Notes: generated by a model from the letters alone, not told the origin. A stretch of DNA of 64,000 nucleotides from Macrostomum lignano (GCA_002269645.1 NIVC01002502.1:62001-126000), one strand, 5' to 3'; positions 6,233 to 50,000 are shown, numbered from the stretch's first letter. Program-made: numbers and translations.

Positions 6233-10239
<4,007 letters not shown>

Positions 10240-10327
10240 CAGCCAACTGGTGATGCGGCTGAGCCAAGCAAGGAAACTGGAGATCTCATCTGAAACTATA
10301 TATGTAACACTGAGCTTTGTGGCGTTT

Positions 10328-16934: not shown

Positions 16935-17663
16935 ATGACTCTCCAGTGGACAATTGTGGCCGGCTTTCTCTACGCTGAGATAGCCGCAGCGATAGCCCTA
17001 ATGCTGCCAGTGTTCAGCGTACAGCGCTGGCGCAAGATATTCCGTTCCCGCCTGCTGAGACGCCTGGACGCCTGGGGCAACGTGTACTTTAACATGTTCC
17101 TGGCCCTGCTAGTGCTGGCCGTGCTTGACGGCTTCCGCAGCGCCAGGAAGCACTCGCTAGAGGCCGACCAAGTGGAAGAGAAAGTCAACCCGCAGGGCCA
17201 CGCGCTCTGCCTGATGCGAATGTTCCGAGCTCAGCGCAATCTCTACATCGCTGGCGGCGCCCTGCTGCTCTGGCTTGTGCTCAAGTGGATGGTGCGGTCC
17301 GTGTCGCAGCGGGCTCTGACCGAGGCCGACCTTCTGGCTGCTCAGCGACAGCTGGACGGCGCCACCATCACGGCTAAGCGGCTCATGGAGTCTTCAACCT
17401 CTTCGACGTCGGCCGCCGCTGCTGGAGCCGGAGGCGGAGACGCCGACGCTCAGGCTACTAAAGATGAAGTTAAGAAGCTGCGCGACCGGCTGAAGGACAC
17501 CGAGGCGGAGCTGCGCAAGGCCCAGGCCAGTCTGGAGGCAATGACGTCGCAGGGCACCAGCGCTGGTCGGGCGTTCGACGAGCTGGCCGAGGAGAACGAA
17601 CAGCTGCGCAAGAAGCTGGCCAGGCTGGAGGGCCAGGAGCAGGAGGTGAAGAAAGACGCTTGA
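16935..17663 (+). CDS. BCAP31: B-cell receptor-associated protein 31/29 (BAP31), 242 aa, single coding exon
   Basis: MTLQWTIVAGFLYAEI N-terminus, three TM segments, FRAQRNLYIAG signature, C-terminal coiled coil and KKDA (KKXX ER-retrieval motif). Confidence 0.96.
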   Translation: MTLQWTIVAGFLYAEIAAAIALMLPVFSVQRWRKIFRSRLLRRLDAWGNVYFNMFLALLVLAVLDGFRSARKHSLEADQVEEKVNPQGHALCLMRMFRAQRNLYIAGGALLLWLVLKWMVRSVSQRALTEADLLAAQRQLDGATITAKRLMESSTSSTSAAAAGAGGGDADAQATKDEVKKLRDRLKDTEAELRKAQASLEAMTSQGTSAGRAFDELAEENEQLRKKLARLEGQEQEVKKDA

Positions 17664-27900: not shown

Positions 27901-30183
27901 CTCTGCTGGGCTTCCAGTTCCAAGGTCCTATAGTGGGCTTCCAGTTCCAAGGTCATATGCTGGGCTTCCAGTTCCAAGGTCCTATAGTGGGCTTCCAGTT
28001 CCAAGGTCATATGCTGGGCTTCCAGTTCCAAGGTCCTATGGTGGGCTTCCAGTTCCAAGGTCCTATGGTGGGCTTCCAGTTCCAAGGTCCTATGGTGGGC
28101 TTCCAGTTCCAAGGTCCTATAGTGGGCTTCCAGTTCCAAGGTCCTATGGTGGGCTTCCAGTTCCAAGGTCCTATAGTGGGCTTCCAGTTCCAAGGTCATA
28201 TGCTGGGCTTCCAGTTCCAAGGTCCTATAGTGGGCTTCCAGTTCCAAGGTCATATGCTGGGCTTCCAGTTCCAAGGTCCATTGGTAGGCTACTAGGGTCC
28301 TATGGTGGGCAGTCAATACTAATCCCTTCCCTGTCCAAGGTGGGCCTTAAACACAAAGCAGCGCTCATCCAACACTTGTAAAGATATTGAACTCGTTGAT
28401 AGAAGTCACTGAAGCAATGAGCAGCATTATAATAAAAACGATGTAGCACGTACCCCATTTCTTCGCTTATATTTTCGACTGTTGTTGACCCAGGAGGCCA
28501 GCAGCTTTTTAGTAGAGTAATACAAATTTGAGGCCATCACTACAGCGAGTCGTGCATTGGCAAAGTCGCATCAATTTGAGACACTTATTATTATGAATAT
28601 AAAATGAATCGCTAGCGAGTTGTGAAGATCTACTACTCATTGGCACGAGTGTACGACAATTAGTACACAAAATTGCATAATTTAATTAGTTAATTAATTC
28701 ATATATAGCTTTAGCAATTTACAAAGTAAATTGAAATGCTCAGTTATTTTAACATTATTAGCAGACTTCAAACTCGAGCAGGAGCTAATTTTTTTATTAT
28801 AAAATTATTAAAACTCACGCATTTTATTCAGATTCCTACTGTCAGTAGGAGTAAAATAATATTAATAGCAATAGTTTGTATGATAAAAAACTATGACGCA
28901 ACAATTATAAATTTTTTCTACTTTAAGTAGGGAAAACGACTTTAAATCTGTTTTTATTTCCGAAATAAAAATATGACGTAACAATAGAATATTTGAAAAT
29001 CTGACCTTTCCACGTGTCGGGCTCAGCAACAATACCGGACGCCAATTGAGCTTGCTCGATAACCGTCTGGGCTACAGCTTGATTGACCGTGTGCTCCCAG
29101 CTGTTTAATAGTACATTTAGGGAGTCATTAGAGCGCGAACTAATCACTAAACTAAATAATAATGCAAGTCTTTTATCGAACTTACGGTTTGGAGAAATCA
29201 AACAGATGAGGCCCGCTACCGCGCAGATTCTTGTAAGTGTCTTTAAGAAGGTTCTAAAAATTTATTTGTTAAAAATCATATCTTAGATTAACTAAATTGC
29301 ATGTTACTTTAAGTAGCTCACTCCTCGATTTTTACTAAAAAAACTAAACTCTTATTTTTATCTTACTAAAAACGACATTTTCTATCATACTACTTAAGTA
29401 AGGATAGCTCAGCGTCTCCATGGATTTTTTTGGCTAAATTTGCAAGAAAAATACATAAATTAAAGAAAATAAATAAATCAAGTAGGAAAACTTCGCAGTC
29501 CTCACCCGAACATCGGCGCCACCGCCGGAGACTGCGGCGGCAGCGGCCGCAGCAGCTGCAGCGGACAGCTGATCGTCGCATTCAATCAGGGATGACCGGC
29601 CAGCGTGTTGATGCTGTTGGCCTCGCTGCCTGGTGCGCTGCTGAAACTGCCGACTACTGCTGCCGCCGCTCTCCTCCCCCATAATCATGACGCAATCGTC
29701 CGCTCCATCGTCAAATGTCTCGTCGACAAAATCGCCAACGCTACCGGTGGCACCACCTATGGCGAATTTTTCTTCATCAACCAGCAGGGAGGAGGCGGAG
29801 GCTGGGGCCTGACTGGATTCGCTCGGCTCGGCTTTGAAGCTGTTGCTGGCGCAGTGCCGCTTGCTAGGCGGAGGTTTGGCCGCCGTTTCCATGGCAACAG
29901 CGGCTGAAGCGGCCCGATCGTGTAGCAACGTTAGTTGACGATTGGCTTCGTCGAGCTGATGACGCAGCTGGCAGGCTGACGGGTGCATGACGTCAACCAG
30001 CTGGTGCTGCAGATTCTGTACCAGACGCATTGCGGACACCAGGTCTTCTAGGGGCATGCTCTCCAGCAGCATGCCCGCGTTGAGCAGGGTGGACTCGAAC
30101 AGGGTCAGGGCTGAGAAGCCCACGCCGCCCGACGCGGCCGACTGGTTTAGCATTGCAGAAGGCGATTGAACTGCTGCGGCCAT
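24957..30183 (-). CDS. Paralogue A: uncharacterised C14orf93-like family protein (~442 aa with variable exon A1 or A2)
   Basis: Exons 30183-29506 (phase 0), 29253-29186 (NLLKDTYKNLRGSGPHLFDFSKP, phase 2), 29100-29006 (WEHTVNQAVAQTVIEQAQ..DTWK, phase 1), one of A1/A2/A3, then 25358-24957 (KLSRRQKAF..DLTSSDEED..VRQLVWESDRVREIKSALD..SARLVPPGAPDWA). All GT..AG; homologous to B and C exon by exon. The C14orf93 likeness of the SSDEE/WES/LD/S.R..P...P.W region is recalled knowledge. Confidence 0.82.
25408..26180. repeat. 29-bp minisatellite GCTTAGGGATCGATATCCTCACTGTGGGA in the last intron of paralogue A
   Basis: Direct inspection; each unit contains TTAGGG and ATCGAT. Confidence 0.96.
26214..26290 (-). 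CDS. Paralogue A candidate variable exon A3 (77 nt): (G)ELRKCVFTTLLNWRKDSRKYLRRNS
   Basis: Acceptor ctcctcaag|, donor |gtaaga, phase 1 to 0. Clearly similar to A1 (LLxxW..[DN]SRKY.RRN). Confidence 0.72.
26445..26530 (-). CDS. Paralogue A candidate variable exon A2 (86 nt): (G)ACRSQFINETKWIGIRRRSAARCNKLKQ
   Basis: Acceptor tcactcag|, donor CAG|gtatcc, phase 1 to 0, same length as A1, basic. Sequence similarity to A1/A3 is weak. Confidence 0.55.
26765..28280. repeat. 27-bp minisatellite (GGTGGGCTTCCAGTTCCAAGGTCCTAT)n between exons A1 and A2
   Basis: About 56 units; in-frame 9-codon unit gives the 508-aa MVGFQFQGP ORF. Confidence 0.97.
28454..28539 (-). CDS. Paralogue A candidate variable exon A1 (86 nt): (V)MASNLYYSTKKLLASWVNNSRKYKRRNG
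   Basis: Acceptor gctgtag|, donor |gtacgt, phase 1 to 0, open frame. Confidence 0.7.
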
Positions 30184-31765: not shown

Positions 31766-34700
31766 CTACTGCCCGTCCCCGCTATAGTCCTGCTGGGCTC
31801 CCGCAGGCGCCCAGGCCGGGTCCCGGGCCCACGGCGCGCAGTCTGGCGGCGGCGGCCGCTCGGACTGGCAGGCGAGATTTCGCTGAAGCCGCTGCAGCTC
31901 GGCGCGCTGCTTCTCGTCGGCCAGCTGTTCGACAAACACGCCGTCAAGATGCTGCTTGACGCTGCGCAATTCGGCGCTCTCCCAGGCCAAGCAGCGAACT
32001 CGGGCGGTCTCAGCTGAGTCCAAGTCCGCCCCGGTCTCCTCATCCGAGCTGGTGTAGTCTCTGGTTAGCACGCTCTGGTAGCGCTGCCGAGACTGCTCAT
32101 CCAGGCTGTCCTTGATTGCCTCGTAGCTTTTCTGGCGACGGTTCAGCTTCTGCGTGGGTGGGGGAGTTGGGACAGGCGGGCGGGTGAGAATGGGGGCTGG
32201 CCTGAATGTGTGAGAATGAAGGCCAGAAGGTGTGTGAGTATGAAGGCCTGAAGGTGTGTGAGAATGAAGGCCTGAAGGTGTGTGAGTATGAAGGCCTGAA
32301 GGTGTGTGAGAATGAAGGCATGAAGGTGAGAATGAAGGCCTGGTGTGTGAGAATGAAAGCCTGAAGGTGTGAGGATAAAGGCCTGGTGTGTGATAATGAA
32401 AGCCTGAAGGTGTCAGAATAAAGGCTCGAAGGTGAGAATGAAGAACTGAAGGTGTGAGGATAAAAGCCTGGTGTGAGAATGAAGGCCTGAAGGTGTGAGA
32501 ATGAAGGCCTGAAGGTGAGATGAAGGCCTGAAGGTGAGAATGAAGGCCTGAAGGTGAGAATAAAGGCCTGAAGGTGAGAATGAAGAACTGAAGGTGTGAG
32601 GATAAAGACCTGGTGTGTGAGAATAAAGGCCTGGTGTGTGAGAACGAAGGCCTGAAGGTGTGAGGATGAAGGTTTGAATGTGTGTGAGAATGAAGGCCTG
32701 AAGGTGTGAGAACAAAGGCCTGAAGGTATGAGAAAAAAGTCCTGAAGTTGTGAGGATGAAGGCCTGAAGGTGCAAGGATGAAGGCCTGAAGGTGAAGCGC
32801 CCCAAGCTAACTCACAATTTGTACTTTTAATAACGAATTAAACTTGGACTGCCTAGCTTTGGCAAGAAAATCACGCCTATAACGCTGCGTGTACCAACTG
32901 CGCAGGTATTTCATAGACACTGCTGTAAAAATATTGTCAGGCATCATGGTATGGATAATTTGAAGGAATAGAAATATCAATTGAAAGGTTTCAAACCGGT
33001 TGCCGAATCATCGCAATTAATTGTGGAGCCTTATTAACTATTCATATTTCTGAATTGAATGGTATCAAACGATCCGTACGAGTACACATCGAGTGCATAT
33101 TCAAGCCAGGAGTGACTTATTTACCTTGAGGCTAGTAGGAGCTGGTCGGAATAGTGTACATTGAGGCTAGTGGGGGCTGGCCGGAATAGAGTGTATGTAC
33201 ATTGAGGCTAGGTGGGCTGGTCGGAAAGAAGTGTACATTGAGGCTAGGGGGGGGGGGCTGGCCGGAAAGAAGTGTACATTGAGGCTAGGGGGCTGGCCGG
33301 AATAGAGTGTACATTGAGGCTAGGGGAGCTGGTCGGAATAGTGTACATTGAGGCTAGTAGGAGCTGGTCGGAATAGTGTACATTGAGGCTAGGGGAGCTG
33401 GTCGGAATAGTGTACATTGAGGCTAGGGGAGCTGGTCGGAATAGTGTACATTGAGGCTAGTAGGAGCTGGTCGGAATAGTGTACATTGAGGCTAGTAGGA
33501 GCTGATCGGAATACTGTACATTGAGGCTAGGGGAGCTGGTCGTAATAGTGTACATTGAGGCTAGTAGGAGCTGATCGGAATACTGTACATTGAGACTAGT
33601 AGGAGCTGATCGGAATAGTGTACATTGAGGCTAGGGGAGCTGGTCGGAATAGTGTACATGGAGGCTAGTAGGAGCTGATCGGAATAGTGTACATTGAGGC
33701 TAGGGGAGCTGGTCGGAATAGTGTACATTGAGGCTAGGGGAGCTGGTCGGAATAGTGTACATTGAGGCTAGGGGAGCTGGTCGGAATAGTGTACATTGAG
33801 GCTAGGGGAGCTGGTCGGAATAGTGTACATTGAGGCTAGGGGAGCTGATCGGAATACTGTACATTGAGGCTAGGGGAGCTGGTCGGAATAGTGTACATTG
33901 AGGCTAGTAGGAGCTGATCGGAATAGTGTACATTGAGGCTAGTAGGAGCTGATCGGAATAGTGCACATTGAGGCTAGGGGAGCTGGTCGGAATAGTGTAC
34001 ATTGAGGCTAGGTGGGCTGGCCGGAAAGAAGTGTACATTGAGGCTAGGGGGGGGCGGGGCTGGCCGGAATAGAGTGTACATTGAGGCTAGGTGGGCTGGT
34101 CGGAAAGAAGTGTACATTGAGGCTAGGGGGGCTGGTCGGAAAGAAGTGTACATTGATGCTGGGGGGGGGGCTGGCCGGAATAGAGTGTACATTGAGGCTA
34201 AAATGAGGGACAAACATGAATTTAGAAGACCCCCAGAGACTCACAGTCTGCACGAAGATTAACGAATTGAGCTTAGACTGCCTAGCCTTGGCATTATAGT
34301 CGCGTCTAAGATTTTGACTGTACCAATTTCGCAAATATTTTTGCGAAACAGCTGAAACATGTATAAATATTGGAAATTGCACTAGAAAGTTCAGTTGCTT
34401 TAAGAAATAATCAACCTATACTACTTATTAGAAAGGTATATAAAGGACCCATCGCAAAAATGGAACAATACAACAAACTAGTCACGTAGAGCATTAATGC
34501 AAAAAATGTCTTGCAGCCTATAAATAAAAATGGTAATAAAAATTCATTTGCGTAAAAGCGTGCATTTTGGATGGGGATTAGGGATGGTTGCTTATGTTTG
34601 TGAACTGATGTACACATTGCGGGGGATGAGATCTGGGGGTGGTCGTTTATGATTCTTGGGCTGATGTACATCGCGGGGGACGAGATCTGGGGTGGTCTGC

Positions 34701-37700
34701 TTATGATTCGTGGGGTGGTCTTATGATGGGCTGATGAACAGACCACCAATACTCACAGTCTGCAGGCTGATAAGAGAGGAGATCTTGCATTTATCGGTCT
34801 TGGCTTTGAAGCTGCGCTTCAAAAATTGCGTATACCAAATGCGAAGATATTTGAAGGAACTGGCTACAATTTCAAGTATTTTTTTACAAAAATACAATTC
34901 ATAAATCTGTAGTTTTAATATACACGAATGAAATATAACACAAGAATTGGAGTTGTTGCAAGGCCAAGATATGCGACAGATGCTCAAGAGACTTATAATA
35001 ATCTTAAGTGTTTTGTAACTCACAAGAGTGGCTGATATGCTAAAATTCGGTCTCAAACGGCGCTGGTAGGGATAGCGCAAATTCTTAGAGTAATGCGGCT
35101 TTAGGTAACGATGACAAGAGGCTGCAAGTATTGATTTCGGCACAATTGATTTGCTGATAATTATTATGAAAGCTAAATCCTTATGCTTTTACTCGTAAGT
35201 CTCTAAGGCTTCATTTCGCTGCCTCTCCGCCGCATTGCAGTGTTTGAGTTGTTAAAAAGTCATAAGAATCGCCTCAGAGGCACTAGTGAGTTTTTTGCCC
35301 TCAACTCGGGGAGGAATTCAGAAAACAGTTAATAAAAAGCAGCAAACAAATTTAATTGATTTACCAATAACTGTTTAATAATTTTTGTGTTGCCATTTTT
35401 CACCGACTTAATATTGTGATCTCTCTTTAATACGCTGTAATAGTAGGCCTTGAAGTACCGCCCGATCATGGCTACAATACGAGTTGTAAGATCAAAATAA
35501 TACGAAAATGTTATTATTCAGTTCGTTAAGTATTGCCAATTTAAAAGCTTAACTAGCGCAAAGGAGCTGCAGTGCACTTGGCTTGTACTGGCTTGACCAT
35601 TGGCATATTTGATTTAGTAGCCAAATTGAAGGTAAAATTGAGTTGAATCTCTTAATAACCAGCTGATGGGCACCCAGCGTGCAGAAATCTTGCTCAGGTT
35701 GAGCATTGAGCACAGATCAGCCGGATGGATCCCGATCAGATGCCCATCTCAGCTTCTATCCAGGCCGCAGTGACTCAGGTGTCATCCTAAACCAAGGCCC
35801 GAACAGGAAGCTGCGCCCCTCATCATCCGGACTTTGCTTACCGCATCGAAATTCGGCAAACCAATCAAAATCTTCGGACAAGCTAGTACGGCGCTTCATC
35901 TCCAAAAGCTCATGTGAGTCGTTTAAGCTTGTACAATATAAAAATATCATAGCTCTCCAATGATTCCTATTGAGTTCCAATGTGACTTTGACAGATATGT
36001 TGCCTATGGTTCCCTCATCCTTACCACGGAGAGCGTCATTATACCGGCCATTCTGGCGGCGTCTTCGAATCTTTTATAAGTAGGCTTTAGAGTAGACTTG
36101 TAGTACACTCTCAGGTAGTTCTTCAGTGCGCTGTCTGCCATCAGTTGCAACATGATTATTCATATCATGATAATGTGGGTTTCCATTAATTATCCTAAAT
36201 TATTGACGATAGACTTTCCAGGCGAAATTGGATCAACATTAAAGCTCTGATTAGCATTTACTTTTTTAAGTGAAAAGCAGTTAGTTTGAGTTAATTAGTT
36301 AATTATTAACATACTAGAAAATGAGGGGACAATTTTCTGTCCAGACGTTGAGAAACGAAGCCAAATAATATTGTTCGAATCCCGCCTTGCTAGCCTAATT
36401 AATATTTAGCTCATTAAATATGCACAAACACACATCTTTGCGATGGCCCTGCAACGCCCTTTTATAATACTCGTATCATTTCTAGTTTTTAACTAAATAC
36501 GCAAATTGTACTACTGATACTAAGTAGTTTTATTTCAATAAAATGCTAGAAAATTCTCACTGCGCCAGGCTTGCAGATTGGCCGGCCGCTCGCGGCCAAG
36601 CATCAGCGCCTTGTCAATCACCCGATTGGCCGCCTGCACATTGGCCTTGGCCGAATAGGGCAGGGCAAAGTCGAATACGTTGCTGCCAGTCTCGTCTTTG
36701 AGCACTCGATAGGCCCGCCTGAGCACGCTTTTCCACTCGTTGGACAGCTCGCCGACACCGCCGCTGCCGGCGCCGCCGCTGCCGCCCATGAGTGCGGAGT
36801 CGTCGCCAGCCAGGCCAGACGAGCCGGCGCCCATCAGCACCTGCTGGGAGCGACCGCCGCCCAGCCTGCTGCCTCCGAGGCCAGACTGATCCAGCATGAA
36901 GTCCGTCTCCATCAGCACGCAGTCGTCGTCGGAATCGGCCGTTGAAGCCTCCAGTTTCATTGATGTCGCCGGCTGAGAGAACTGCTGCTGCTGTTGCTGC
37001 TGCTGCATGAGCAGCTTCTCCGCTTTGTCCGGCTTCGACGAGGTGCTCGACGAATCAGCAAAGGCAGGTGGAGGCGGCGGGCACTGAAAGGTGCAGAGGT
37101 TGAATGGAGATTGACAATCAACTGCATTTATGCTACTAATAGTAGGTGCGAGATTTCTCAGTAGCGTGCGAACCTCGGGACACACTGCCAAATCTCAGGA
37201 CACACTGCCAAGCCTAAGGACACGCTGCCAACCCTAAGGACACACTGCCAACCCTAAGGACACGCTGCCAACCCTAAGGAAACGCTGCCAACCCTAAGGA
37301 CACGCAACCAACCCTCAGGACACACTGCCAACCCTCAGGACACACTGCCAACCCTCAGGACACACTGCCAACCCTCAGGACACGCTGCCAACCCTCAGGA
37401 CACGCTGCCAACCCTAAGGACACGCTGCCAACCCTAAGGACACACTGCCAACCCTAAGGACACGCTGCCAACCCTAAGGACACGCTGCCAACCCTCAGGA
37501 CACACTGCCAACCCTAAGGACACGCTGCCAACCCTAAGGACACGCTGCCAACCCTCAGGACACGCTGCCAACCCTCAGGACACACTGCCAACCCTCAGGA
37601 CACACTGCCAACCCTCAGGACACACTGCCAACCCTAAGGACACGCTGCCAACCCTAAGGACACGCTGCCAACCCTAAGGACACGCTGCCAACCCTAAGGA

Positions 37701-38187
37701 CACACTGCCAACCCTAAGCACACGCTGCCAACCCTAAGGACACGCTGCCAACCCTCAGGACACACTGCCAACTCTCAGGACACGCTGCCAACCCTCAGGA
37801 CACACTGCCAACTCTCAGGACACACTGCCAACCCTCAGGACACACTGCCAAGCCTCAGGACACACTGCCAACCCTCCAATCAATATTGAACTCATCCCAG
37901 ATTGCGCATTACTGCAATAGCGCCTCTCTTACCAAGGCGTGCTCGTCGGCCACGCTCGCCAGCCGCTGCACAGCAGGATCCAGCACTTCCATGAGGTGGC
38001 CGTTCAGCTGCGCCACAATGCGGAATGCCAGCAGCAGGTCGCGCACTGCCATGTTATCAATAAGCATAGTGGCGCTGGATATTGTGCACTCGAACATGGT
38101 TAGCGGCGAGAACGTTCCGCCGCCACCGCTGCCCCCGCCGCCCCCTCTGAGCGGCTGCGAGGGCATAGAAAAAGTAGCTGACGCCAT
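31766..38187 (-). CDS. Paralogue B: uncharacterised C14orf93-like family protein (~422 aa with one 107-nt variable exon)
   Basis: Exons 38187-37933 (FSPLTMFECTISSATMLIDNMAVRDLLLAFRIV.., donor |gtaaga, phase 0), 37083-36561 (..EWKSVLRRAYRVL..FDFALPYSAKANVQAANRVIDKAL..QAWR, donor A|gtgaga, phase 1), one of B1-B6, then 32149-31766 (KLNRRQKSYE..DYTSSDEE..VRCLAWESAELRSVKQHLD..SERPPPPDCAPWA). The sum 255+523+107+384=1269 nt is in frame. Confidence 0.87.
32195..32795. repeat. Degenerate ~20-24-bp repeat GAATGAAGGCCTGAAGGTGTG in the last intron of paralogue B
   Basis: Direct inspection. Confidence 0.9.
32816..32922 (-). CDS. Paralogue B variable exon B6 (107 nt): (T)VSMKYLRSWYTQRYRRDFLAKARQSKFNSLLKVQI
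   Basis: atttttacag| ... |gtgagt, phase 1 to 0. Shares GCCAA(G/A)GCTAGGCAGTC with B5. Confidence 0.88.
33125..34200. repeat. ~34-bp minisatellite GTACATTGAGGCTAGGGGAGCTGGTCGGAATAGT between exons B5 and B6
   Basis: Direct inspection. Confidence 0.94.
34245..34351 (-). CDS. Paralogue B variable exon B5 (107 nt): (T)VSQKYLRNWYSQNLRRDYNAKARQSKLNSLIFVQT
   Basis: atgtttcag| ... CAGACT|gtgagt, phase 1 to 0. Confidence 0.88.
34575..34740. repeat. Short degenerate ~58-bp tandem duplication between exons B4 and B5
   Basis: TGATGTACA..GCGGGGGA(T/C)GAGATCTGGGG occurs twice, with a third partial copy. Confidence 0.7.
34757..34863 (-). CDS. Paralogue B variable exon B4 (107 nt): (T)SSFKYLRIWYTQFLKRSFKAKTDKCKISSLISLQT
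   Basis: aattgtag| ... CAGACT|gtgagt, phase 1 to 0. Confidence 0.87.
35024..35121 (-). CDS. Paralogue B variable exon B3 (98 nt): (T)SCHRYLKPHYSKNLRYPYQRRLRPNFSISATL
   Basis: tacttgcag| ... |gtgagt, phase 1 to 0, RYL..HY motif. Confidence 0.8.
35365..35471 (-). CDS. Paralogue B variable exon B2 (107 nt): (T)MIGRYFKAYYYSVLKRDHNIKSVKNGNTKIIKQLL
   Basis: gtattgtag| ... |gtaaat, phase 1 to 0, RYF.AYY motif. Confidence 0.78.
35668..35900 (-). mobile_element. Decayed mariner (Tc1/mariner) transposase N-terminal fragment
   Basis: Minus-strand translation DWFAEFRCGKQSPDDEGRS ... IEAEMGI*SGSIRLI (frameshift) LNLSKISARWVP matches the mariner HTH motifs WF..F..G..S..D..RSGRP, IA..MGIS.GS and the conserved [LM].K.SARWVP linker. 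No TIRs identified. Confidence 0.75.
36025..36134 (-). CDS. Paralogue B variable exon B1 (110 nt): (N)SALKNYLRVYYKSTLKPTYKRFEDAARMAGIMTLSV
   Basis: gatggcag| ... |gtaagg, phase 1 to 0. Closest to the single exon of paralogue C (YL..[WY]Y..TLKPT). Confidence 0.8.
37190..37875. repeat. 20-bp (GGACAC(G/A)CTGCCAACCCT(A/C)A)n minisatellite in paralogue B intron 1
   Basis: Direct inspection; many units contain CCCTAA. Confidence 0.96.
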
Positions 38188-41002: not shown

Positions 41003-44000
41003 TCATCCAAGGATAGATCCAGCCTCTAATCTAGACGCTTCATCAATAATATCTTCGTCATCGTCGTCCTCGGCGCAGCCGTTCAGATCGTCCGGATCCG
41101 CCGGTCGGGCCCAGGCCGGCGCGGTGGCCGCCTCGGCGTGATGGGCGGCGGCGGCGGCAGCCACAGCCGCGGCGCTGGCGCTCTCGGACCGGTCCACGGC
41201 CCAGTCAGGAGCATCCACCGGAGCCCGCCTGCTGCTCACGTATCCGGGATGCCGCCTGACTCTGGCCAGCTCAGCTTTCTCGCGTTCGTCGGATAATTCT
41301 TCGGCAAAGTGGCCGTCTAGGATTGACTTCAGCCTGGCCGATTCCAGCGTCTCCCAGGGCAGCAGTTTCACGTACAGGCAGCCGTCCGGCTCCTCTTCGT
41401 CCGAGCTGACCATGTCGCGCTCGACCAGGGCGGCCATTCGGTCGCCGGTAGCCGGGGAGAGGCGGTTCAGCGCCAGCAGGCTCTGCAGGCTTCGGCGGCG
41501 CTGCGACAGCTTCTGCGGAGAGGGGGGATGGGCGGGACTAACGTGTCAACTGACAAACTGACTGCTGACAAACTGACTGCTGACTGCTGACAAACTGACT
41601 GCTGACAAACTGACTGCTGACAAACTGGCTGCTGACAAACTGACTGCTGATAAACTGGCTGCTGACAAACTGGCTGCTGACAAACTGACTGCTGACTGCT
41701 GACAAACTGACTGCTGCCAAACTGGCTGCTGACAAACTGGCTGCTGACAAACTGGCTGCTGACAAACTGACTGCTGACAAACTGACTGCTGACAAACTGG
41801 CTGCTGACAAACTGACTGCTGATAAACTGGCTGCTGACAAACTGACTGCTGACAAACTGACTGCTGACAAACTGGCTGCTGATAAACTGACTGCTGACAA
41901 ACTGGCTGCTGACAAACTGACTGCTGATAAACTGACTGCTGACAAACTGGCTGCTGACAAACTGGCTGCTGACAAACTGACAAACTGACTGCTGACAAAC
42001 TGACTGCTGACAAACTGGCTGCTGACAAACTGACTGCTGACAAACTGGCTGCTGACAAACTGACTGCTGACAAACTGACTGCTGATAAACTGACAAACTG
42101 ACTACTGACAAACTGGCTGCTGACAAACTGACTGCTGACAAACTGACTGCTGACAAACTGGCTGCTGACAAACTGGCTGCTGACAAACTGACTGCTGACA
42201 AACTGACTGCTGACAAACTGACTGCTGATAAACTGGCTGCTGACAAACTGACTGCTGACAAACTGACTGCTGATAAACTGACTGCTGATAAACTGACAAA
42301 CTGGCTGCTGACAAACTGACTGCTGACAAACTGACTGCTGACAAACTGACTGCTGACAAACTGACTGCTGACAAACTGACTGCTGATAAACTGACTGCTG
42401 ACAAACTGACTGCTGATAAACTGGCTGCTGACAAACTGACTGCTGACAAACTGACTGCTGATAAACTGACAAACTGACTACTGACAAACTGGCTGCTGAC
42501 AAACTGACTGCTGACAAACTGACTGCTGACAAACTGGCTGCTGACAAACTGACTGCTGACAAACTGACTGCTGACAAACTGACTGCTGACAAACTGACTG
42601 CTGACAAACTGACTGCTGATAAACTGACTGCTGACAAACTGACTGCTGACAAACTGACTGCTGACAAACTGACTGCTGACAAACTGACTGCTGACAAACT
42701 GACTGCTGATAAACTGACTGCTGACAAACTGACTGCTGATAAACTGACTGCTGATAAACTGACTGCTGACAAACTGACTGCTGACAAACTGACTGCTGAC
42801 AAACTGACTGCTGATAAACTGACAAACTGACTACTGACAAACTGGCTGCTGACAAACTGACTGCTGACAAACTGACTGCTGACAAACTGACTGCTGACAA
42901 ACTGACTGCTGATAAACTGACTGCTGATAAACTGACTGCTGACAAACTGACTGCTGATAAACTGGCTGCTGATAAACTGACTACTGATAAACTGACTACT
43001 GATAAACTGACTGCTGACAAACTGACTGCTGATAAACTGACTGCTGACAAACTGACTGCTGACAAACTGACTGCTGACCAACTGACTGCTGACAAACTGA
43101 CTGCTGACAAACTGACTGCTGATAAACTGACTGCTGACAAACTGACTGCTGATAAACTGGCTGCTGACAAACTGACTGCTGACAAACTGACTGCTGATAA
43201 ACTGACAAACTGACTACTGACAAACTGGCTGCTGACAAACTGACTGCTGACAAACTGACTGCTGACAAACTGACTGCTGACAAACTGACTGCTGATAAAC
43301 TGACTGCTGATAAACTGACTGCTGACAAACTGACTGCTGATAAACTGGCTGCTGATAAACTGACTACTGATAAACTGACTACTGATAAACTGACTGCTGA
43401 CAAACTGACTGCTGACAAACTGGCTGCTGATAAACTGACTGCTGACAAACTGACTGCTGACTGCTGATAAACTGACTGCTGACTGCTGACAAACTGACTG
43501 CTGACAAACTGACTGCTGATAAACTGACTGCTGACAAACTGGCTGCTGACAAACTGGCTGCTGACAAACTGACAAACTGACTGCTGACAAACTGACTGCT
43601 GACAAACTGGCTGCTGACAAACTGACTGCTGACAAACTGGCTGCTGACAAACTGACTGCTGACAAACTGACTGCTGATAAACTGACAAACTGACTACTGA
43701 CAAACTGGCTGCTGACAAACTGACTGCTGACAAACTGGCTGCTGACAAATTGACTGCTGACAAACTGACTGCTGATAAACTGACAAACTGACTACTGACA
43801 AACTGGCTGCTGACAAACTGACTGCTGACAAACTGACTGCTGACAAACTGACTGCTGATAAACTGACAAACTGACTACTGACAAACTGGCTGCTGACAAA
43901 CTGACTGCTGACAAACTGACTGCTGACAAACTGACTGCTGACAAACTGGCTGCTGACAAACTGACTGCTGACAAACTGGCTGCTGACAAACTGACTGCTG

Positions 44001-47000
44001 ACAAACTGGCTGCTGACAAACTGACTGCTGACAAACTGACTACTGACAAACTGACTCCTGACAAACTGACTGCTGACAAACTGGCTGCTGACAAACTGTC
44101 TGCTGACAAACTGACTGCTGACAAACTGACTGCTGACAAACTGACTGCTGACAAACTGACTGCTGACTGCTGACAAACTGACTGCTGACAAACTGACTGC
44201 TGACAAACTGACTGCTGACAAACTGGCTGCTGACAAACTGACTGCTGACAAACTGACTGCTGACAAACTGACTGCTGACAAACTGACTGCTGACAAACTG
44301 ACTGCTGACTGCTGACAAACTGACTGCTGACAAACTGACTGCTGACAAACTGACTGCTGACAAACTGGCTGCTGACAAACTGACTGCTGACAAACTGACT
44401 GCTGACAAACTGGCTGCTGACAAACTGACTGCTGACAAACTGACTGCTGACAAACTGACTGCTGATAAACTGACTGCTGACTGCTGACAAACTGACTGCT
44501 GATAAACTGGCTGCTGATAAACTGACTGCTGACAAACTGACTGCTGACAAACTGGCTGCTGATAAACTGACTGCTGACAAACTGACTGCTGAAAAACTGA
44601 CTGCTGACAAACTGACTGCTGACAAACTGACTGCTGATAAACTGACTACTGATAAACTGACTACTGATAAACTGACTGCTGACAAACTGACTGCTGACAA
44701 ACTGACTGCTGACAAACTGACTGCTGATAAACTGACTACTGACAAACTGACTGCTGACAAACTGACTGCTGACAAACTGACTACTGACAAACTGACTGCT
44801 GACTGCTGACAAACTGACTGCTGATAAACTGACTGCTGACAAACTGACAAACTGACTGCTGATAAACTGACTACTGACAAACTGGCTGCTGATAAACTGA
44901 CTGCTGACAAACTGACTGCTGACTGCTGACAAACTGACTGCTGACAAACTGACTGCTGACAAACTGGCTGCTGATAAACTGACTACTGACAAACTGACTG
45001 CTGACTGCTGACAAACTGACTGCTGACAAACTGGCTGCTGATAAACTGACTGCTGACAAACTGACTGCTGACAAACTGGCTGCTGATAAACTGACTGCTG
45101 ACAAACTGACTGCTGAAAAACTGACTGCTGACAAACTGACTGCTGACTGCTGACAAACTGACTGCTGATAAACTGACTGCTGACAAACTGACTGCTGATA
45201 AACTGACAAACTGACTGCTGACAAACTGACTGCTGACAAACTGACTGCTGACAAACTGACTGCTGACAAACTGACTACTGACAAACTGACTGCTGACTGC
45301 TGACAAACTGACTGCTGACAAACTGGCTGCTGATAAACTGACTGCTGATAAACTGACTGCTGACAAACTGACTGCTGATAAACTGACTGCTGACAAACTG
45401 ACTGCTGACAAACTGACTGCTGACAAACTGACTGCTGACAAACTGACTGCTGACAAACTGACAAACTGACTGCTGACAAACTGACTGCTGACAAACTGAC
45501 TGCTGACAAACTGACTGCTGACAAACTGGCTGCTGACTGCTGACAAACTGACTGCTGACAAACTGACTGCTGATAAACTGACTGCTGACAAACTGACTGC
45601 TGACAAACTGACAAACTGACTGCTGACAAACTGACTGCTGACAAACTGACTGCTGACAAACTGACTGCTGACAAACTGACTGCTGACAAACTGACTGCTG
45701 ACAAACTGACTGCTGACTGCTGACAAACTGACTGCTGATAAACTGACTGCTGACAAACTGACTGCTGATAAACTGACAAACTGACTGCTGACAAACTGAC
45801 TGCTGACAAACTGACTGCTGACAAAATGACTGCTGATAAACTGACTGCTGACAAACTGACTGCTGACAAACTGACTGCTGACAAACTGACAAACTGACTG
45901 CTGACAAACTGACTGCTGACAAACTGACTGCTGACAAACTGACTGCTGACAAACTGACTGCTGACAAACTGACAAACTGACTGCTGATAAACTGACTGCT
46001 GACAAACTGACTGCTGACAAACTGACTGCTGACAAACTGACTGCTGACAAACTGACTGCTGATAAACTGGCTGCTGACAAACTGACTGCTGACAAACTGA
46101 CTGCTGACTGCTGACAAACTGACTGCTGACAAACTGACTGCTGACAAACTGACTGCTGACAAACTGACTGCTGATAAACTGGCTGCTGATAAACTGACTG
46201 CTGACTGCTGACAAACTGACTGCTGACAAACTGACTGCTGACTGCTGACAAACTGACTGCTGACAAACTGACTGCTGACTGCTGACAAACTGACTGCTGA
46301 CAAACTGACTGCTGACAAACTGACTGCTGACAAACTGACTGCTGACAAACTGACTGCTGACAAACTGACTGCTGATAAACTGACTGCTGACAAACTGACT
46401 GCTGACAAACTGACTGCTGATAAACTGGCTGCTGACAAACTGACTGCTGACAAACTGACTGCTGACAAACTGACTGCTGACAAACTGACTGCTGACAAAC
46501 TGACTGCTGACAAACTGACTGCTGATAAACTGACTGCTGACAAACTGGCTGCTGATAAACTGACTGCTGACAAACTGGCTGCTGACAAACTGACTGCTGA
46601 CAAACTGACTGCTGACAAACTGACTGCTGATAAACTGACTGCTGACAAACTGGCTGCTGACAAACTGACTGCTGACAAACTGGCTGCTGACAAACTGACT
46701 GCTGACAAACTGACTGCTGACAAACTGACTGCTGATAAACTGACTGCTGACAAACTGGCTGCTGACAAACTGACTGCTGACAAACTGACTGCTGACAAAC
46801 TGGCTGCTGACAAACTGACTGCTGACAAACTGACTGCTGACAAACTGACTGCTGACAAACTGACAAACTGACTGCTGATAAACTGACTGCTGATAAACTG
46901 ACTGCTGACTGCTGATAAACTGACTGCTGACAAACTGACTGCTGACAAACTGACTGCTGACAAACTGACAAACTGACTGCTGACTGCTGACAAACTGACT

Positions 47001-50000
47001 GCTGACTGCTGATAAACTGACTGCTGACTGCTGATAAACTGACTGCTGAAAACTGACTGCTGACAAACTGACAAACTGACTGCTGATAAACTGACTGCTG
47101 ACAAACTGACTGCTGACAAACTGACTGCTGACTGCTGATAAACTGACTGCTGACTGCTGACAAACTGACTGCTGACAAACTGACTGCTGACAAACTGACT
47201 GCTGACAAACTGACAAACTGACTGCTGATAAACTGACTGCTGACAAACTGACTGCTGACAAACTGACTGCTGACAAACTGACTGCTGACAAACTGACTGC
47301 TGACAAACTGGCTGCTGACAAACTGACTGCTGACAAACTGACTGCTGACAAACTGACTGCTGACAAACTGACTGCTGACAAACTGACTGCTGACTGCTGA
47401 CAAACTGACTGCTGACAAACTGACTGCTGACAAACTGACTGCTGACAAACTGGCTGCTGACAAACTGACTGCTGACAAACTGACTGCTGACAAACTGGCT
47501 GCTGACAAACTGACTGCTGACAAACTGACTGCTGACAAACTGACTGCTGATAAACTGACTGCTGACTGCTGACAAACTGACTGCTGATAAACTGGCTGCT
47601 GATAAACTGACTGCTGACAAACTGGCTGCTGACAAACTGACTGCTGACAAACTGGCTGCTGACAAACTGACTGCTGACAAACTGACTGCTGACAAACTGA
47701 CTGCTGATAAACTGACTGCTGACAAACTGGCTGCTGACAAACTGACTGCTGACAAACTGACTGCTGACAAACTGGCTGCTGACAAACTGACTGCTGACAA
47801 ACTGACTGCTGACAAACTGACTGCTGACAAACTGACAAACTGACTGCTGATAAACTGACTGCTGATAAACTGACTGCTGACTGCTGATAAACTGACTGCT
47901 GACAAACTGACTGCTGACAAACTGACTGCTGACAAACTGACAAACTGACTGCTGACTGCTGACAAACTGACTGCTGACTGCTGATAAACTGACTGCTGAC
48001 TGCTGATAAACTGACTGCTGACAAACTGACTGCTGACAAACTGACAAACTGACTGCTGATAAACTGACTGCTGACAAACTGACTGCTGACAAACTGACTG
48101 CTGACTGCTGATAAACTGACTGCTGACTGCTGACAAACTGACTGCTGACAAACTGACTGCTGACAAACTGACTGCTGACAAACTGACAAACTGACTGCTG
48201 ATAAACTGACTGCTGACAAACTGACTGCTGACAAACTGACTGCTGACAAACTGACTGCTGACAAACTGGCTGCTGACAAACTGACTGCTGACAAACTGAC
48301 TGCTGACAAACTGACTGCTGACAAACTGACTGCTGACAAACTGACTGCTGACTGCTGACAAACTGACTGCTGACAAACTGACTGCTGACAAACTGACTGC
48401 TGACAAACTGGCTGCTGACAAACTGACTGCTGACAAACTGACTGCTGACAAACTGGCTGCTGACAAACTGACTGCTGACAAACTGACTGCTGACAAACTG
48501 ACTGCTGATAAACTGACTGCTGACTGCTGACAAACTGACTGCTGATAAACTGGCTGCTGATAAACTGACTGCTGACAAACTGACTGCTGACAAACTGGCT
48601 GCTGATAAACTGACTGCTGACAAACTGACTGCTGAAAAACTGACTGCTGACAAACTGACTGCTGACAAACTGACTGCTGATAAACTGACTACTGATAAAC
48701 TGACTACTGATAAACTGACTGCTGACAAACTGACTGCTGACAAACTGACTGCTGACAAACTGACTGCTGATAAACTGACTACTGACAAACTGACTGCTGA
48801 CAAACTGACTGCTGACAAACTGACTACTGACAAACTGACTGCTGACTGCTGACAAACTGACTGCTGATAAACTGACTGCTGACAAACTGACAAACTGACT
48901 GCTGATAAACTGACTACTGACAAACTGGCTGCTGATAAACTGACTGCTGACAAACTGACTGCTGACTGCTGACAAACTGGCTGCTGACAAACTGACTGCT
49001 GACAAACTGGCTGCTGACAAACTGACTACTGACAAACTGACAAACTGACTGCTGATAAACTGACTGCTGACAAACTGGCTGCTGACAAACTGACTGCTGA
49101 CAAACTGACTGCTGACAAACTGGCTGCTGACAAACTGACTGCTGACAAACTGACTGCTGACAAACTGACTGCTGACAAACTGACAAACTGACTGCTGATA
49201 AACTGACTGCTGATAAACTGACTGCTGACTGCTGATAAACTGACTGCTGACAAACTGACTGCTGACAAACTGACTGCTGACAAACTGACAAACTGACTGC
49301 TGACTGCTGACAAACTGACTGCTGACTGCTGATAAACTGACTGCTGACTGCTGATAAACTGACTGCTGACAAACTGACTGCTGACAAACTGACAAACTGA
49401 CTGCTGATAAACTGACTGCTGACAAACTGACTGCTGACAAACTGACTGCTGACTGCTGATAAACTGACTGCTGACTGCTGACAAACTGACTGCTGACAAA
49501 CTGACTGCTGACAAACTGACTGCTGACAAACTGACAAACTGACTGCTGATAAACTGACTGCTGACAAACTGACTGCTGACAAACTGACTGCTGACAAACT
49601 GACTGCTGACAAACTGACTGCTGACAAACTGGCTGCTGACAAACTGACTGCTGACAAACTGACTGCTGACAAACTGACTGCTGACAAACTGACTGCTGAC
49701 AAACTGACTGCTGACTGCTGACAAACTGACTGCTGACAAACTGACTGCTGACAAACTGACTGCTGACAAACTGGCTGCTGACAAACTGACTGCTGACAAA
49801 CTGACTGCTGACAAACTGGCTGCTGACAAACTGACTGCTGACAAACTGACTGCTGACAAACTGACTGCTGATAAACTGACTGCTGACTGCTGACAAACTG
49901 ACTGCTGATAAACTGGCTGCTGATAAACTGACTGCTGACAAACTGGCTGCTGACAAACTGACTGCTGACAAACTGGCTGCTGACAAACTGACTGCTGACA

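What the first reader, a model, noticed from the sequence alone, without database searches (positions are those of the whole stretch)
32816..36134. Hidden array of six mutually exclusive-type exons in paralogue B
Between constant exons 37083-36561 (ends phase 1) and 32149-31766 (starts phase 0) lie six short homologous exons: B1 36134-36025, B2 35471-35365, B3 35121-35024, B4 34863-34757, B5 34351-34245 and B6 32922-32816. Each has an AG acceptor and a GTRAG/GTAAA donor, an open frame and phase 1 to 0. Lengths are 110/107/98/107/107/107 nt (all 3n+2), and they share a [TN]x3-4[KRN]Y[LF][RK]x[WYH]Y core. The junction codon gives Thr in five of six. Including one exon restores the frame; including none or two frameshifts the last exon. 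This is the architecture of Dscam/myosin-type mutually exclusive exon clusters, here in an uncharacterised gene. It is mostly invisible in the ORF track. Exon structure is seen in the sequence; mutually exclusive use is inference.
Basis: partly seen in the sequence, partly recalled or inferred. Interest (0 to 1): 0.95.

Follow-up and report, generated by a model that had tools for sequence, protein, structure and literature searches.

The report
Flatworm alternative-exon array with RNA docking site
An uncharacterised gene of the flatworm Macrostomum lignano carries six interchangeable versions of one exon, plus conserved intron sequences that can base-pair like the "docking site and selectors" that make the insect Dscam gene use only one exon version per mRNA, which would be an independent origin of that mechanism outside arthropods.

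Summary
All six exons (B1-B6) are at the stated coordinates, with AG/GT boundaries, lengths 110/107/98/107/107/107 nt (all 3n+2) and open frames in phase 1→0. Of 64 inclusion combinations, only the six single inclusions give the full-length ORF of 420-424 aa. The window is Macrostomum lignano (flatworm), not an insect. A profile trained only on other paralogues' cassettes recovers all six. They are also the only coding islands conserved between this intron and those of paralogues sharing about 50% protein identity. Synonymous sites are saturated while the peptides are kept. Four other B-type paralogues carry arrays of 3-8 cassettes, and their deposited models use different single cassettes. 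New here: a conserved intronic element (36467-36436, core AAGGGCGTTGCAGGGC) lies 93 nt downstream of the upstream constant exon. It is complementary to sequences 40-100 nt upstream of most cassettes. This holds in four paralogues, including one kept as a hold-out. That matches the docking-site/selector layout of Dscam exon 6. Caveats: no RNA reads were available, the only transcript model for this gene skips all cassettes, and the selectors for B1 and B3 are weak. Verdict: a real mutually-exclusive-type array, a new member of a known kind in a new phylum and gene family.

The parts
37933..38187 (-). Constant exon 1 of gene B (ATG at 38187; 255 nt; ends phase 0; donor GTAAGA)
   Evidence: The junction ...EHAL|CPPPP is used in the transcript-derived model P0001.
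36561..37083 (-). Constant exon 2 (523 nt; ends phase 1; donor GTGAGA)
   Evidence: The donor is used in P0001, whose sequence joins ...AWR directly to the last exon.
36436..36467 (-). Candidate docking site TTATAAAAGGGCGTTGCAGGGCCATCGCAAAG (core AAGGGCGTTGCAGGGC at 36461-36446), starting 93 nt downstream of the exon 2 donor
   Evidence: It is the only non-exon island conserved with the paralogue introns and is unique in the window. The same core lies at the same intron position in L001, L003, L004 and L005. It ranks 1 of 877 windows for pairing to the regions upstream of all cassettes. It is identical in the second gene copy. There is no Rfam match.
36136..36151 (-). Possible selector 1 (GTTGCAACTGATGGCA), abutting the B1 acceptor; weak
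   Evidence: dG only -12.7 kcal/mol, so it is not distinguishable from background.
36025..36134 (-). Cassette B1 (110 nt; 'TLKP' class; NSALKNYLRVYYKSTLKPTYKRFEDAARMAGIMTLSV)
   Evidence: E 2e-4; island conserved with the first cassette of L001.
35559..35606 (-). Selector 2 (core CACTGCAGCTCCTTTG), ending 87 nt upstream of B2
   Evidence: dG -23.8, 22 bp. Identical in L004.
35365..35471 (-). Cassette B2 (107 nt; 'SVLKRD' class)
   Evidence: (matches the third cassette of L001).
35204..35235 (-). Selector 3 candidate (with CTGCAATGCGG just upstream), ending 82 nt upstream of B3; uncertain
   Evidence: dG -21.5. It is not conserved in the second gene copy, where a structural variant replaces this stretch.
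35024..35121 (-). Cassette B3 (98 nt; 'KNLRYP' class)
   Evidence: It has a clear counterpart in L005 (KSHRYLSPQYYKNWQY..RPSFRVSASL).
34948..34967 (-). Selector 4 (TTGGCCTTGCAACAACTCCA), ending 84 nt upstream of B4
   Evidence: dG -25.0, 15 bp, near-perfect complement of the core. Identical in L004.
34757..34863 (-). Cassette B4 (107 nt)
   Evidence: (2.5e-8).
34431..34459 (-). Selector 5 (TTTTGCGATGGGTCCTTT...), ending 79 nt upstream of B5; it pairs with the gene-specific 3' flank of the docking site
   Evidence: dG -25.7, 21 bp. Identical in L004.
34245..34351 (-). Cassette B5 (107 nt)
   Evidence: (2e-10). B5 vs B6: dN 0.26, dS about 3.
32983..33017 (-). Selector 6 (ATTGCGATGATTCGGCAACCGG...), ending 60 nt upstream of B6
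   Evidence: dG -22.2, 21 bp. Identical in L004.
32816..32922 (-). Cassette B6 (107 nt)
31766..32149 (-). Last constant exon (384 nt with the stop codon; starts phase 0); it encodes the family's conserved C-terminal KLNRRQK...SSDEE...RVRxLxWES domain
   Evidence: The acceptor is used in P0001.
33122..34200 (.). Minisatellite (34-nt unit, about 30 copies) filling most of intron B5-B6
   Evidence: No function is assigned; it inflates the distance between B5 and B6.
32199..32794 (.). Minisatellite (22-nt unit, about 27.5 copies) filling the intron between B6 and the last exon
   Evidence: On the gene strand the unit reads CACCTTCAGGCC..., which resembles an acceptor. No function is assigned.

Best explanation
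Gene B is a Macrostomum lignano member of an uncharacterised gene family found across bilaterians. One ancestral 3n+2 exon, which is single in sister paralogues A and C, has been tandemly multiplied into six alternative cassettes.

Proposed mechanism:
(1) A roughly 30-nt docking site, 93 nt into the intron after constant exon 2, base-pairs with one of several complementary selector sequences. Each selector lies about 60-90 nt upstream of a cassette acceptor.
(2) There is only one docking site, so only one pairing can form per pre-mRNA.
(3) The pairing loops out the cassettes in between and brings the chosen cassette next to the exon 2 donor, so that cassette is spliced in.
(4) The cassette donor then joins the last exon.
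(5) The reading frame acts as a second filter. mRNAs with no cassette, or with two or more, are frameshifted. Most multi-cassette products carry a stop codon more than 50 nt upstream of the last junction, which makes them likely NMD substrates. The all-skipped product stops in the last exon and encodes a 276-aa protein lacking the conserved C-terminal domain.
(6) Each cassette encodes about 35 residues of a long helix in the ordered core of the protein, so the isoforms differ in one helical surface.

Shown: the exon anatomy, the homology, the conservation and selection, the paralogue arrays, the frame logic, and the existence, conservation and complementarity of the docking and selector sequences. 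Inferred: that the pairing forms in vivo, that it activates rather than represses the adjacent cassette, that use is one cassette per mRNA, and what the isoforms do.
For: Anatomy and frame. Only 6 of 64 combinations keep the ORF.

Homology independent of gene B: HMM from other paralogues; a six-frame scan finds exactly six cassettes.

Conservation: an unbiased tblastx of the whole intron against paralogue introns gives islands at B1-B6 plus the docking site.

Selection: dS is saturated with dN 0.26-0.57, and B5/B6 omega is about 0.09. Between two roughly 99%-identical gene copies, the cassettes show 2/636 differences, both synonymous, against 15/1128 in unique intron sequence (Fisher p 0.04).

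Arrays in paralogues: L001 has 7 cassettes, L003 has 8, L002 has 3 and L005 has at least 4. Genes A and C have a single homologous exon of the same phase and 3n+2 length.

Isoform evidence: deposited models of one gene carry different single cassettes (mapped). The NCBI models derive from a genome-guided transcriptome (PMC5730564).

Docking and selectors:
- The core GGRCGTTGCAGGGC occurs once per B-type gene, always between exon 2 and the first cassette. It is absent from A- and C-type genes.
- Mean best duplex to the cassette-upstream regions, compared with shuffled docking sites: winB 1/300, L001 0/300, L003 0/300 and hold-out L005 0/300 shuffles reach the observed value (z -3.3 to -6.6).
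- In an unbiased scan, the element is the best-pairing window in winB (1/877), L003 (1/694) and L005 (1/840), and third in L001.
- Selector 3' ends lie 40-100 nt upstream of the acceptor in 22 of 25 cassettes (p 6e-8).
- A gene's own docking site pairs better than the paralogues' docking sites in 20 of 25 cassettes (Wilcoxon p 2.7e-4).
- The docking site and five of six selectors are identical in the second gene copy despite large intron indels.

Protein context: the cassette lies in helix H244-299 of the P0002 model (pLDDT about 70-91). The cassette tyrosine is invariant across phyla.
Against: No RNA-seq or cDNA reads could be examined. No protein containing any B1-B6 cassette exists in the searched collections.

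The only transcript-derived model of this gene (P0001, from the nearly identical copy L004) joins exon 2 directly to the last exon and so skips all cassettes. Use is therefore not strictly 'one and only one', or this gene is poorly assembled.

B1 has no convincing selector (dG -12.7). Selector 3 is not conserved between the two gene copies.

For gene B itself, the own-versus-cross docking-site advantage is absent, and 6 of 300 random-position controls reach the observed value.

Paralogue L002 has no recognisable docking site.

No mechanism is visible for silencing the cassettes downstream of the chosen one, and no downstream docking site was found.

The second member of each isoform pair comes from UniProt/WormBase-type predictions whose RNA support I did not verify.
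Confidence: 0.72

Rival explanations
1. The cassettes are real alternative exons, but choice does not depend on docking-selector pairing. Exclusivity is enforced only by the reading frame and NMD, and/or by trans-acting splicing factors. On this view the conserved intronic element is a protein-binding splicing enhancer or silencer, and its complementarity to the upstream regions is incidental or a relic of the duplication history.
For: All cassettes are 3n+2, and only single inclusion keeps the ORF. B1 lacks a selector and selector 3 is not conserved. L002 has an array but no recognisable docking site. Gene B shows no own-versus-cross advantage.
Against: Tandem duplication produces direct repeats, not reverse-complement ones. 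Yet the single element is complementary to many sites, all in one orientation and at a regular 40-100 nt from the acceptors. It is the top-ranked pairing window in 3 of 4 genes, including a hold-out gene. Selectors match gene-specific flanks of the docking site (20/25). The element is absent from the single-exon paralogues A and C.
Confidence: 0.15
2. Only one cassette, or none, is functional in gene B. The others would be decaying exon duplicates (pseudo-exons), and gene B would mainly produce the cassette-skipped truncated protein annotated as P0001.
For: P0001, the only transcript-derived model, skips all cassettes. No database protein carries B1-B6. B1-B3 are only weakly similar to B4-B6.
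Against: All six cassettes keep open frames, AG/GT sites and consensus donors. Each has a class-specific counterpart in paralogues of about 50% protein identity, while the surrounding introns cannot be aligned. dS is saturated while dN stays low. The only differences between the two gene copies are synonymous. The annotation pipeline kept only isoforms at 0.75 or more of the major one, which would suppress six low-share isoforms. Paralogue models use first, middle and last cassettes.
Confidence: 0.08
3. The docking and selector motifs are fragments of a mobile element with inverted repeats that is scattered in these introns, with no role in splicing.
For: The genome is extremely repeat-rich and the window is about half minisatellite. 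A structural variant removes one selector.
Against: The core occurs once in the 64-kb window and once per B-type gene in about 135 kb of other loci, always at the same intron position and on the same strand. Complementary copies occur only upstream of cassettes, all in one orientation. There is no flanking repeat structure and no Rfam match.
Confidence: 0.03

Closest known systems
Dscam1 exon 6 cluster of arthropods (docking site / selector sequences; Graveley 2005, as summarised in PMC6071210)
   Same: A tandem array of homologous, similar-length alternative exons. A single conserved docking site in the intron right after the upstream constant exon. One complementary selector upstream of each variant. 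Only one pairing is possible at a time. The selector consensus is the reverse complement of the docking core.
   Different: Six cassettes here (3-8 in paralogues) against 48 in Drosophila. A different phylum (Platyhelminthes) and an unrelated intracellular-looking helical protein of unknown function, not an Ig-domain receptor. The first cassette lacks a clear selector. The cassettes are 3n+2, so the frame also enforces single inclusion. The Dscam exon 6 variants are, from my own knowledge, frame-neutral; I did not check this here. No experimental support exists yet.
14-3-3zeta, Mhc, MRP1 and Dscam exon 4/9 clusters of insects (competing RNA structures with a downstream docking site; PMC6071210, PMC4691838)
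   Same: A small cluster of mutually exclusive exons controlled by competing intronic base-pairings.
   Different: In those genes the docking site lies downstream of the cluster. Here it lies upstream, and a scan for a downstream site found none.
Frame/NMD-enforced mutually exclusive exon pairs (the principle mentioned in PMC6071210)
   Same: Exon lengths that are not multiples of three, so that zero or double inclusion shifts the frame and creates premature stops.
   Different: Here the frame rule coexists with a docking/selector layout and applies to a six-member array. The skipped form has its stop in the last exon and would escape junction-dependent NMD.
Known flatworm mutually exclusive exons: the coq-2 exon pair (PMC7434440) and predicted muscle myosin heavy chain clusters (PMC3912159)
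   Same: Mutually exclusive exons do exist in Platyhelminthes.
   Different: Those are ancient clusters shared across phyla in well-known genes. No RNA-pairing mechanism has been described for them in the papers I found. This one is a lineage-specific expansion in an unnamed family.

Membership tests
Mutually exclusive exon (MXE) cluster | Tandem neighbouring exons of similar length, homologous sequence, and identical splice phase at both ends | tested here: met
   Lengths are 98-110 nt, all in phase 1→0 and all 3n+2. Homology was shown with a profile independent of gene B.
Mutually exclusive exon (MXE) cluster | Each exon has functional-looking splice sites and an open frame, and is maintained by selection | tested here: met
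   AG acceptors and GTRAGT-type donors. Islands conserved with paralogues. dS saturated with low dN. Only synonymous differences between the two gene copies.
Mutually exclusive exon (MXE) cluster | Exactly one exon of the cluster is present in each mature mRNA | not testable with these tools
   No reads were available. Indirect support: paralogue models carry one cassette each, and different ones. Indirect counter-evidence: P0001 skips all cassettes.
Mutually exclusive exon (MXE) cluster | Inclusion of none, or of more than one, is incompatible with the protein | tested here: met
   58 of 64 combinations are frameshifted or terminated early.
Docking-site/selector (competing RNA structure) system of the Dscam exon 6 type | A single conserved intronic docking site adjacent to the constant exon | tested here: met
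   The core is conserved 14/14 or 13/14 nt in four paralogous genes whose introns cannot otherwise be aligned. It is unique in the window.
Docking-site/selector (competing RNA structure) system of the Dscam exon 6 type | A selector complementary to the docking site upstream of every variable exon | tested here: inconclusive
   Clear for B2, B4, B5 and B6 and for most paralogue cassettes. Significant overall. However, B1 is weak, selector 3 is not conserved, and L002 has no recognisable docking site.
Docking-site/selector (competing RNA structure) system of the Dscam exon 6 type | [quoted passage not shown] | tested here: met
   A gene's own docking site beats the paralogues' docking sites in 20 of 25 cassettes (p 2.7e-4). 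Not seen for gene B alone.
Docking-site/selector (competing RNA structure) system of the Dscam exon 6 type | Disrupting the pairing changes exon choice, and compensatory mutations restore it | not testable with these tools
   This needs minigene or transgenic experiments.
Named protein family | A significant match to a curated domain or a solved structure | tested here: not met
   No Pfam hit above threshold. No PDB sequence or fold match. The homologues in hemichordate, echinoderm, mollusc, amphioxus and brachiopod are all annotated as 'uncharacterized'.

The most novel reading that the evidence does not exclude
A docking-site/selector RNA switch of the Dscam exon 6 type evolved independently in flatworms, in an unnamed gene family conserved across bilaterians. 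It has been maintained through several gene duplications. At least four paralogues each choose one of 4-8 versions of a core helix, which would give a combinatorial repertoire of isoforms whose biological role is unknown.
Probability: 0.6. Interest if true: 0.85.

Novelty: new member of a known kind. Interest (0 to 1): 0.8.

Why it matters
According to the literature I could search, competing-RNA-structure control of large exon arrays has been worked out almost entirely in arthropod genes, with a few two-exon cases in mammals. A second, independent and multi-gene instance in a transgenesis-capable flatworm would do three things.

First, it would show that the docking/selector solution is a recurrent outcome of tandem exon duplication, as predicted in PMC6071210. 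Second, it would provide natural replicates for studying how such switches arise and co-evolve, because several paralogues have diverged docking-site flanks and selectors. Third, it would attach a striking regulatory feature to a protein family that is conserved from flatworms to amphioxus and has no known function.

It also shows that the current M. lignano annotation misses this diversity. The deposited model of this gene is the frameshifted, cassette-less form.

Tried and rejected
- Insect origin. I assumed this at first from the sequence style, but the protein search rejected it.
- Transcript-level evidence. Two word-based protein searches, including a six-isoform alignment query, found no protein carrying any B cassette, so no RNA-derived evidence for gene B is available in these collections.
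- Submitting the spliced gene B protein.
- A second, downstream docking site (bidirectional model). The scan showed nothing distinct.
- A docking site in L002. None is recognisable.
- Known RNA family for the conserved intron element. No Rfam hit.
- Protein function. Pfam, PDB sequence search and Foldseek gave nothing.
- dN/dS between distant cassette orthologues. dS is saturated and not computable, and the B1 pairs were mis-registered by one codon, so I discarded them.
- One shuffle run timed out and was redone more economically.
- A formal column-by-column covariation count was not attempted. The duplexes contain bulges that prevent a clean fixed-register alignment, so I used the own-versus-cross docking-site test instead.

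Full report
**1. What is in the sequence**

On the minus strand the window encodes a four-part gene (gene B).
- Exon 1 is 38187-37933. It starts at the ATG, is 255 nt long, and has donor GTAAGA.
- Exon 2 is 37083-36561. It is 523 nt long and ends in phase 1.
- The last exon is 32149-31766. It starts in phase 0 and ends at a stop codon.

reproduces every number in the finding.
- The lengths are 110/107/98/107/107/107 nt, all 3n+2.
- The acceptors end in CAG or TAG.
- The donors are GTAAGG, GTAAAT and GTGAGT (four times).
- All six frames are open.
- The junction codon gives Asn for B1 and Thr for B2-B6.

Joining exon 1, exon 2, one cassette and the last exon gives an uninterrupted CDS of 420-424 codons for each of the six cassettes. 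I enumerated all 64 inclusion patterns, and only the six single inclusions keep the frame.
- The skipped form stops 17 codons into the last exon.
- All patterns with three or more cassettes, and 11 of the 15 doubles, stop more than 50 nt upstream of the last junction.

**2. Is it more than chance?**

Splice and frame compatibility alone is cheap. The same interval contains 60 segments that are AG..GT, 3n+2 and open. Homology is the discriminating feature.
- B4, B5 and B6 are clearly related to each other (tblastn E 1e-8 to 1e-13).
- B1-B3 are only marginally related to them (E 0.002 to 1).

I therefore built a profile from eight cassettes taken only from annotated models of other paralogues. 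I scored every splice- and frame-compatible candidate in six introns, about 20,000 in all. All six B exons were recovered (B5 2e-10, B4 2.5e-8, B6 7e-6, B1 2e-4, B3 6e-3, B2 8e-3). A six-frame scan with the final 26-cassette profile ignores splice sites altogether. It finds exactly these six cassettes in gene B, one in gene C, and nothing else in the window.

**3. Organism and family**

The window is from the flatworm Macrostomum lignano. The best hit is BOX15_Mlig023559g2, at 99% identity (P0001). Three tandem paralogues lie on the minus strand.
- Gene C runs from about 62.2 kb to 41.0 kb.
- Gene B runs from 38.2 kb to 31.8 kb.
- Gene A runs from about 30.2 kb to 25.0 kb.

The C-B-A order, or at least the B-A pair, recurs at four other loci of the Mlig_3_7 assembly.

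A full HMMER search of 1.84 billion representatives found 492 relatives. They include uncharacterised proteins of a hemichordate, a sea star, a bivalve, amphioxus and a brachiopod. There is no Pfam domain, no PDB sequence relative and no structural match. The function of the protein is therefore unknown.

In an AlphaFold model of the closest full-length paralogue, the ordered core spans residues 181-320 (pLDDT 75-91). The cassette, at about residues 249-284, lies within a long helix, H244-299. The tyrosine of the cassette's K-Y-L motif is one of four invariant columns across phyla. The cassettes therefore swap a conserved structural segment.

**4. Evidence that the cassettes are functional exons**

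(a) An unbiased tblastx compared the whole cassette-hosting intron with the equivalent introns of three paralogues that share about 50% protein identity. It returned islands at B1, B2, B3, B4, B5 and B6, and each island hit a positionally corresponding cassette. It also returned one non-exon island, described in section 6. The rest of the introns cannot be aligned.

(b) Cassette classes are conserved in order.
- The 'TLKP' class comes first: B1, L001-1/2, L002-1/2, L005-1 and gene C.
- The 'SVLKRD' class links B2 with L001-3.
- The 'KNLRYP' class links B3 with L005-2.
- The 'SKLNSL..VQT' class comes last: B4-B6, L001-7 and L002-3.

(c) Synonymous sites are saturated while dN is 0.26-0.57. B5/B6 omega is about 0.09 and B4/B5 is about 0.29.

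(d) A second copy of gene B (L004) differs from the window at 2 of 636 cassette positions, and both changes are synonymous. The rate in unique intron sequence is 15 of 1128 (Fisher p 0.04).

(e) Genes A and C have a single homologous exon with the same phase and 3n+2 length: 86 nt at 28539-28454 and 95 nt at 59992-59898. The array is therefore an expansion of one ancestral exon in the B-type lineage, and the frame property is inherited.

**5. Evidence on usage**

The NCBI models derive from a genome-guided transcriptome built with StringTie and TACO. Only isoforms at 0.75 or more of the major one were kept (PMC5730564), which would hide minor alternative isoforms. Even so, different deposited models of the same gene contain different single cassettes.

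| Gene (locus) | Model | Cassette used |
|---|---|---|
| L002 | P0005 | 12554-12672 |
| L002 | P0007 | 14396-14502 |
| L003 | P0003 | 12764-12870 |
| L003 | P0009 / P0016 | 13859-13977 |
| L001 | P0002 | 13686-13792 |
| L001 | P0006 | starts with 11936-12042 |

The junctions in these models fall exactly at the predicted AG/GT boundaries.

For gene B itself, the only model (P0001) joins exon 2 directly to the last exon and ends in the frameshifted tail ...AWRKAEPSPEKLRGNQGQPG. This confirms the two constant splice sites. It also shows that skipping occurs, or that the assembler could not resolve six low-share paths. No protein with a B cassette exists in the searched collections. Mutually exclusive use of B1-B6 therefore remains an inference.

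**6. A docking-site/selector layout**

The extra conserved island lies at 36467-36436, starting 93 nt downstream of the exon 2 donor. Its sequence is TTATAAAAGGGCGTTGCAGGGCCATCGCAAAG. The core AAGGGCGTTGCAGGGC is unique in the 64-kb window. The core GGRCGTTGCAGGGC occurs exactly once in each of L001, L003, L004 and L005. In every case it lies between exon 2 and the first cassette, and it never occurs in A- or C-type genes.

RNAduplex scans showed that the strongest partners of this element lie upstream of individual cassettes. One example is L001 CCCTGGCAACGCCCTTT, compared with the core's reverse complement CCCTGCAACGCCCTTT.

*Test 1: shuffled docking sites.* I compared the mean best duplex energy to the -170..-40 regions with 300 dinucleotide-shuffled docking sites.

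| Gene | Observed mean dG (kcal/mol) | Shuffled mean dG | Shuffles reaching observed |
|---|---|---|---|
| winB | -21.8 | -17.4 | 1/300 |
| L001 | -29.7 | -23.9 | 0/300 |
| L003 | -24.4 | -17.6 | 0/300 |
| L005 (fetched after the hypothesis was formed) | -25.7 | -19.7 | 0/300 |

*Test 2: unbiased scan.* I scored every 30-nt window of each intron for its mean pairing to all cassette-upstream regions. The conserved element ranks as follows.
- 1 of 877 in winB.
- 1 of 694 in L003.
- 1 of 840 in L005.
- 3 of 778 in the GC-rich L001.

*Test 3: position.* Selector 3' ends lie 40-100 nt upstream of the acceptor in 22 of 25 cassettes (binomial p 6e-8 against uniform placement).

*Test 4: co-variation.* The docking sites share the core but differ in their flanks. 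A cassette's upstream region pairs better with its own gene's docking site than with the paralogues' docking sites in 20 of 25 cases (Wilcoxon p 2.7e-4).

*Test 5: second gene copy.* The docking site and selectors 1, 2, 4, 5 and 6 are identical in the second gene B copy, despite indels of 200 nt or more in the same introns.

This matches the architecture defined for the Dscam exon 6 cluster: an upstream docking site, and a selector before each variant (PMC6071210).

**7. Weak points of the pairing model**

- B1 has no convincing selector (dG -12.7, at the acceptor itself).
- Selector 3 lies in a stretch that a structural variant replaces in the other gene copy.
- For gene B alone, the own-versus-cross advantage is nil, and 6 of 300 random-position controls reach the observed value.
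- L002 has three cassettes but no recognisable docking site.
- No downstream docking site or other device was found that would explain how cassettes 3' of the chosen one are skipped.
- The direction of the effect, activation versus repression, cannot be read from sequence.

**8. Comparison with known systems, and novelty**

The closest known system is the arthropod Dscam1 exon 6 cluster. The insect 14-3-3zeta, Mhc and MRP1 clusters differ in having downstream docking sites (PMC6071210). In flatworms, a coq-2 exon pair (PMC7434440) and predicted myosin clusters (PMC3912159) are known. Full-text searches found no report of mutually exclusive arrays in Macrostomum, and none of competing RNA structures in Platyhelminthes.

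The layout fits the duplication model of Ivanov and Pervouchine, in which copying an exon together with one arm of an intronic stem creates competing selectors (PMC6071210). I therefore classify this as a new member of a known kind. It is an apparently independent origin, in a new phylum and an unnamed gene family, and it is replicated across paralogues.

**9. Verdict**

What remains to be shown is one-per-mRNA usage and the in vivo role of the pairing. Both can be tested directly with existing RNA-seq data and with M. lignano transgenesis.

Noticed in passing
window 41550-59862: An 18.3-kb array of a 15-nt unit (CTGACAAACTGACTG, about 1,282 copies) fills the intron between gene C's single cassette exon (59992-59898) and its last exon (about 41515). 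It produces the very long spurious ORFs in the ORF table.
   Followed up: partly
window 37173-37876, 33122-34200, 32199-32794: Three introns of gene B are mostly minisatellite: 20-nt x35, 34-nt x30 and 22-nt x27.5 copies. On the gene strand the last unit reads CACCTTCAG|GCC, which resembles a 3' splice site repeated about 27 times just upstream of the true last-exon acceptor. Copy numbers differ between the window and L004.
   Followed up: partly
L004 (NIVC01002989.1) 10001-16247; protein P0001: The deposited gene model for this gene is the cassette-less, frameshifted form. It encodes 276 aa and lacks the family's conserved C-terminal domain. Its stop codon lies in the last exon, so it would escape junction-dependent NMD. 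It could be a genuine truncated isoform or an assembly simplification.
   Followed up: partly
window about 35215-35330 vs L004 about 12890-12995: There is a structural variant between the two copies of gene B. The sequence more than about 95 nt upstream of B3 is entirely different, and this removes the candidate selector 3 in one copy.
   Followed up: yes
window 28454-28539 (gene A) and 59898-59992 (gene C): Paralogues A and C have a single exon homologous to the cassettes, 86 nt and 95 nt long. Both are 3n+2 and in phase 1→0, and neither gene has a docking core. The A, B, C gene order recurs at other loci.
   Followed up: yes
window 35252-35286 vs L002 13123-13157: A 35-nt intronic stretch between B2 and B3 is 86% identical to an intronic stretch after cassette 2 of paralogue L002. 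It is the only nucleotide-level match between these introns, and it is unexplained.
   Followed up: no
window 16935-17663 (+): An intronless 242-aa ORF encodes a Bap31/Bap29-family protein (PF05529, E 1.7e-32).
   Followed up: partly
proteins P0093 / P0162 (Branchiostoma lanceolatum): The amphioxus homologue has a short annotated isoform that ends exactly at the position equivalent to the boundary between the cassette and the last exon. This suggests that the intron position is ancient. I did not examine whether other phyla have duplicated this exon.
   Followed up: no
UniProt names of M. lignano family members (P0006, P0007, P0009, P0012, P0015-P0018): The names given by the source (Exo70, DUF4211, Ras-GEF, Metallophos, TPR, BACK and others) are inconsistent across near-identical proteins, and Pfam scans of P0007 and four other family members gave no hit above threshold (the other named models were not scanned). 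They probably come from fused or mis-clustered gene models and should not be used to infer function.
   Followed up: partly
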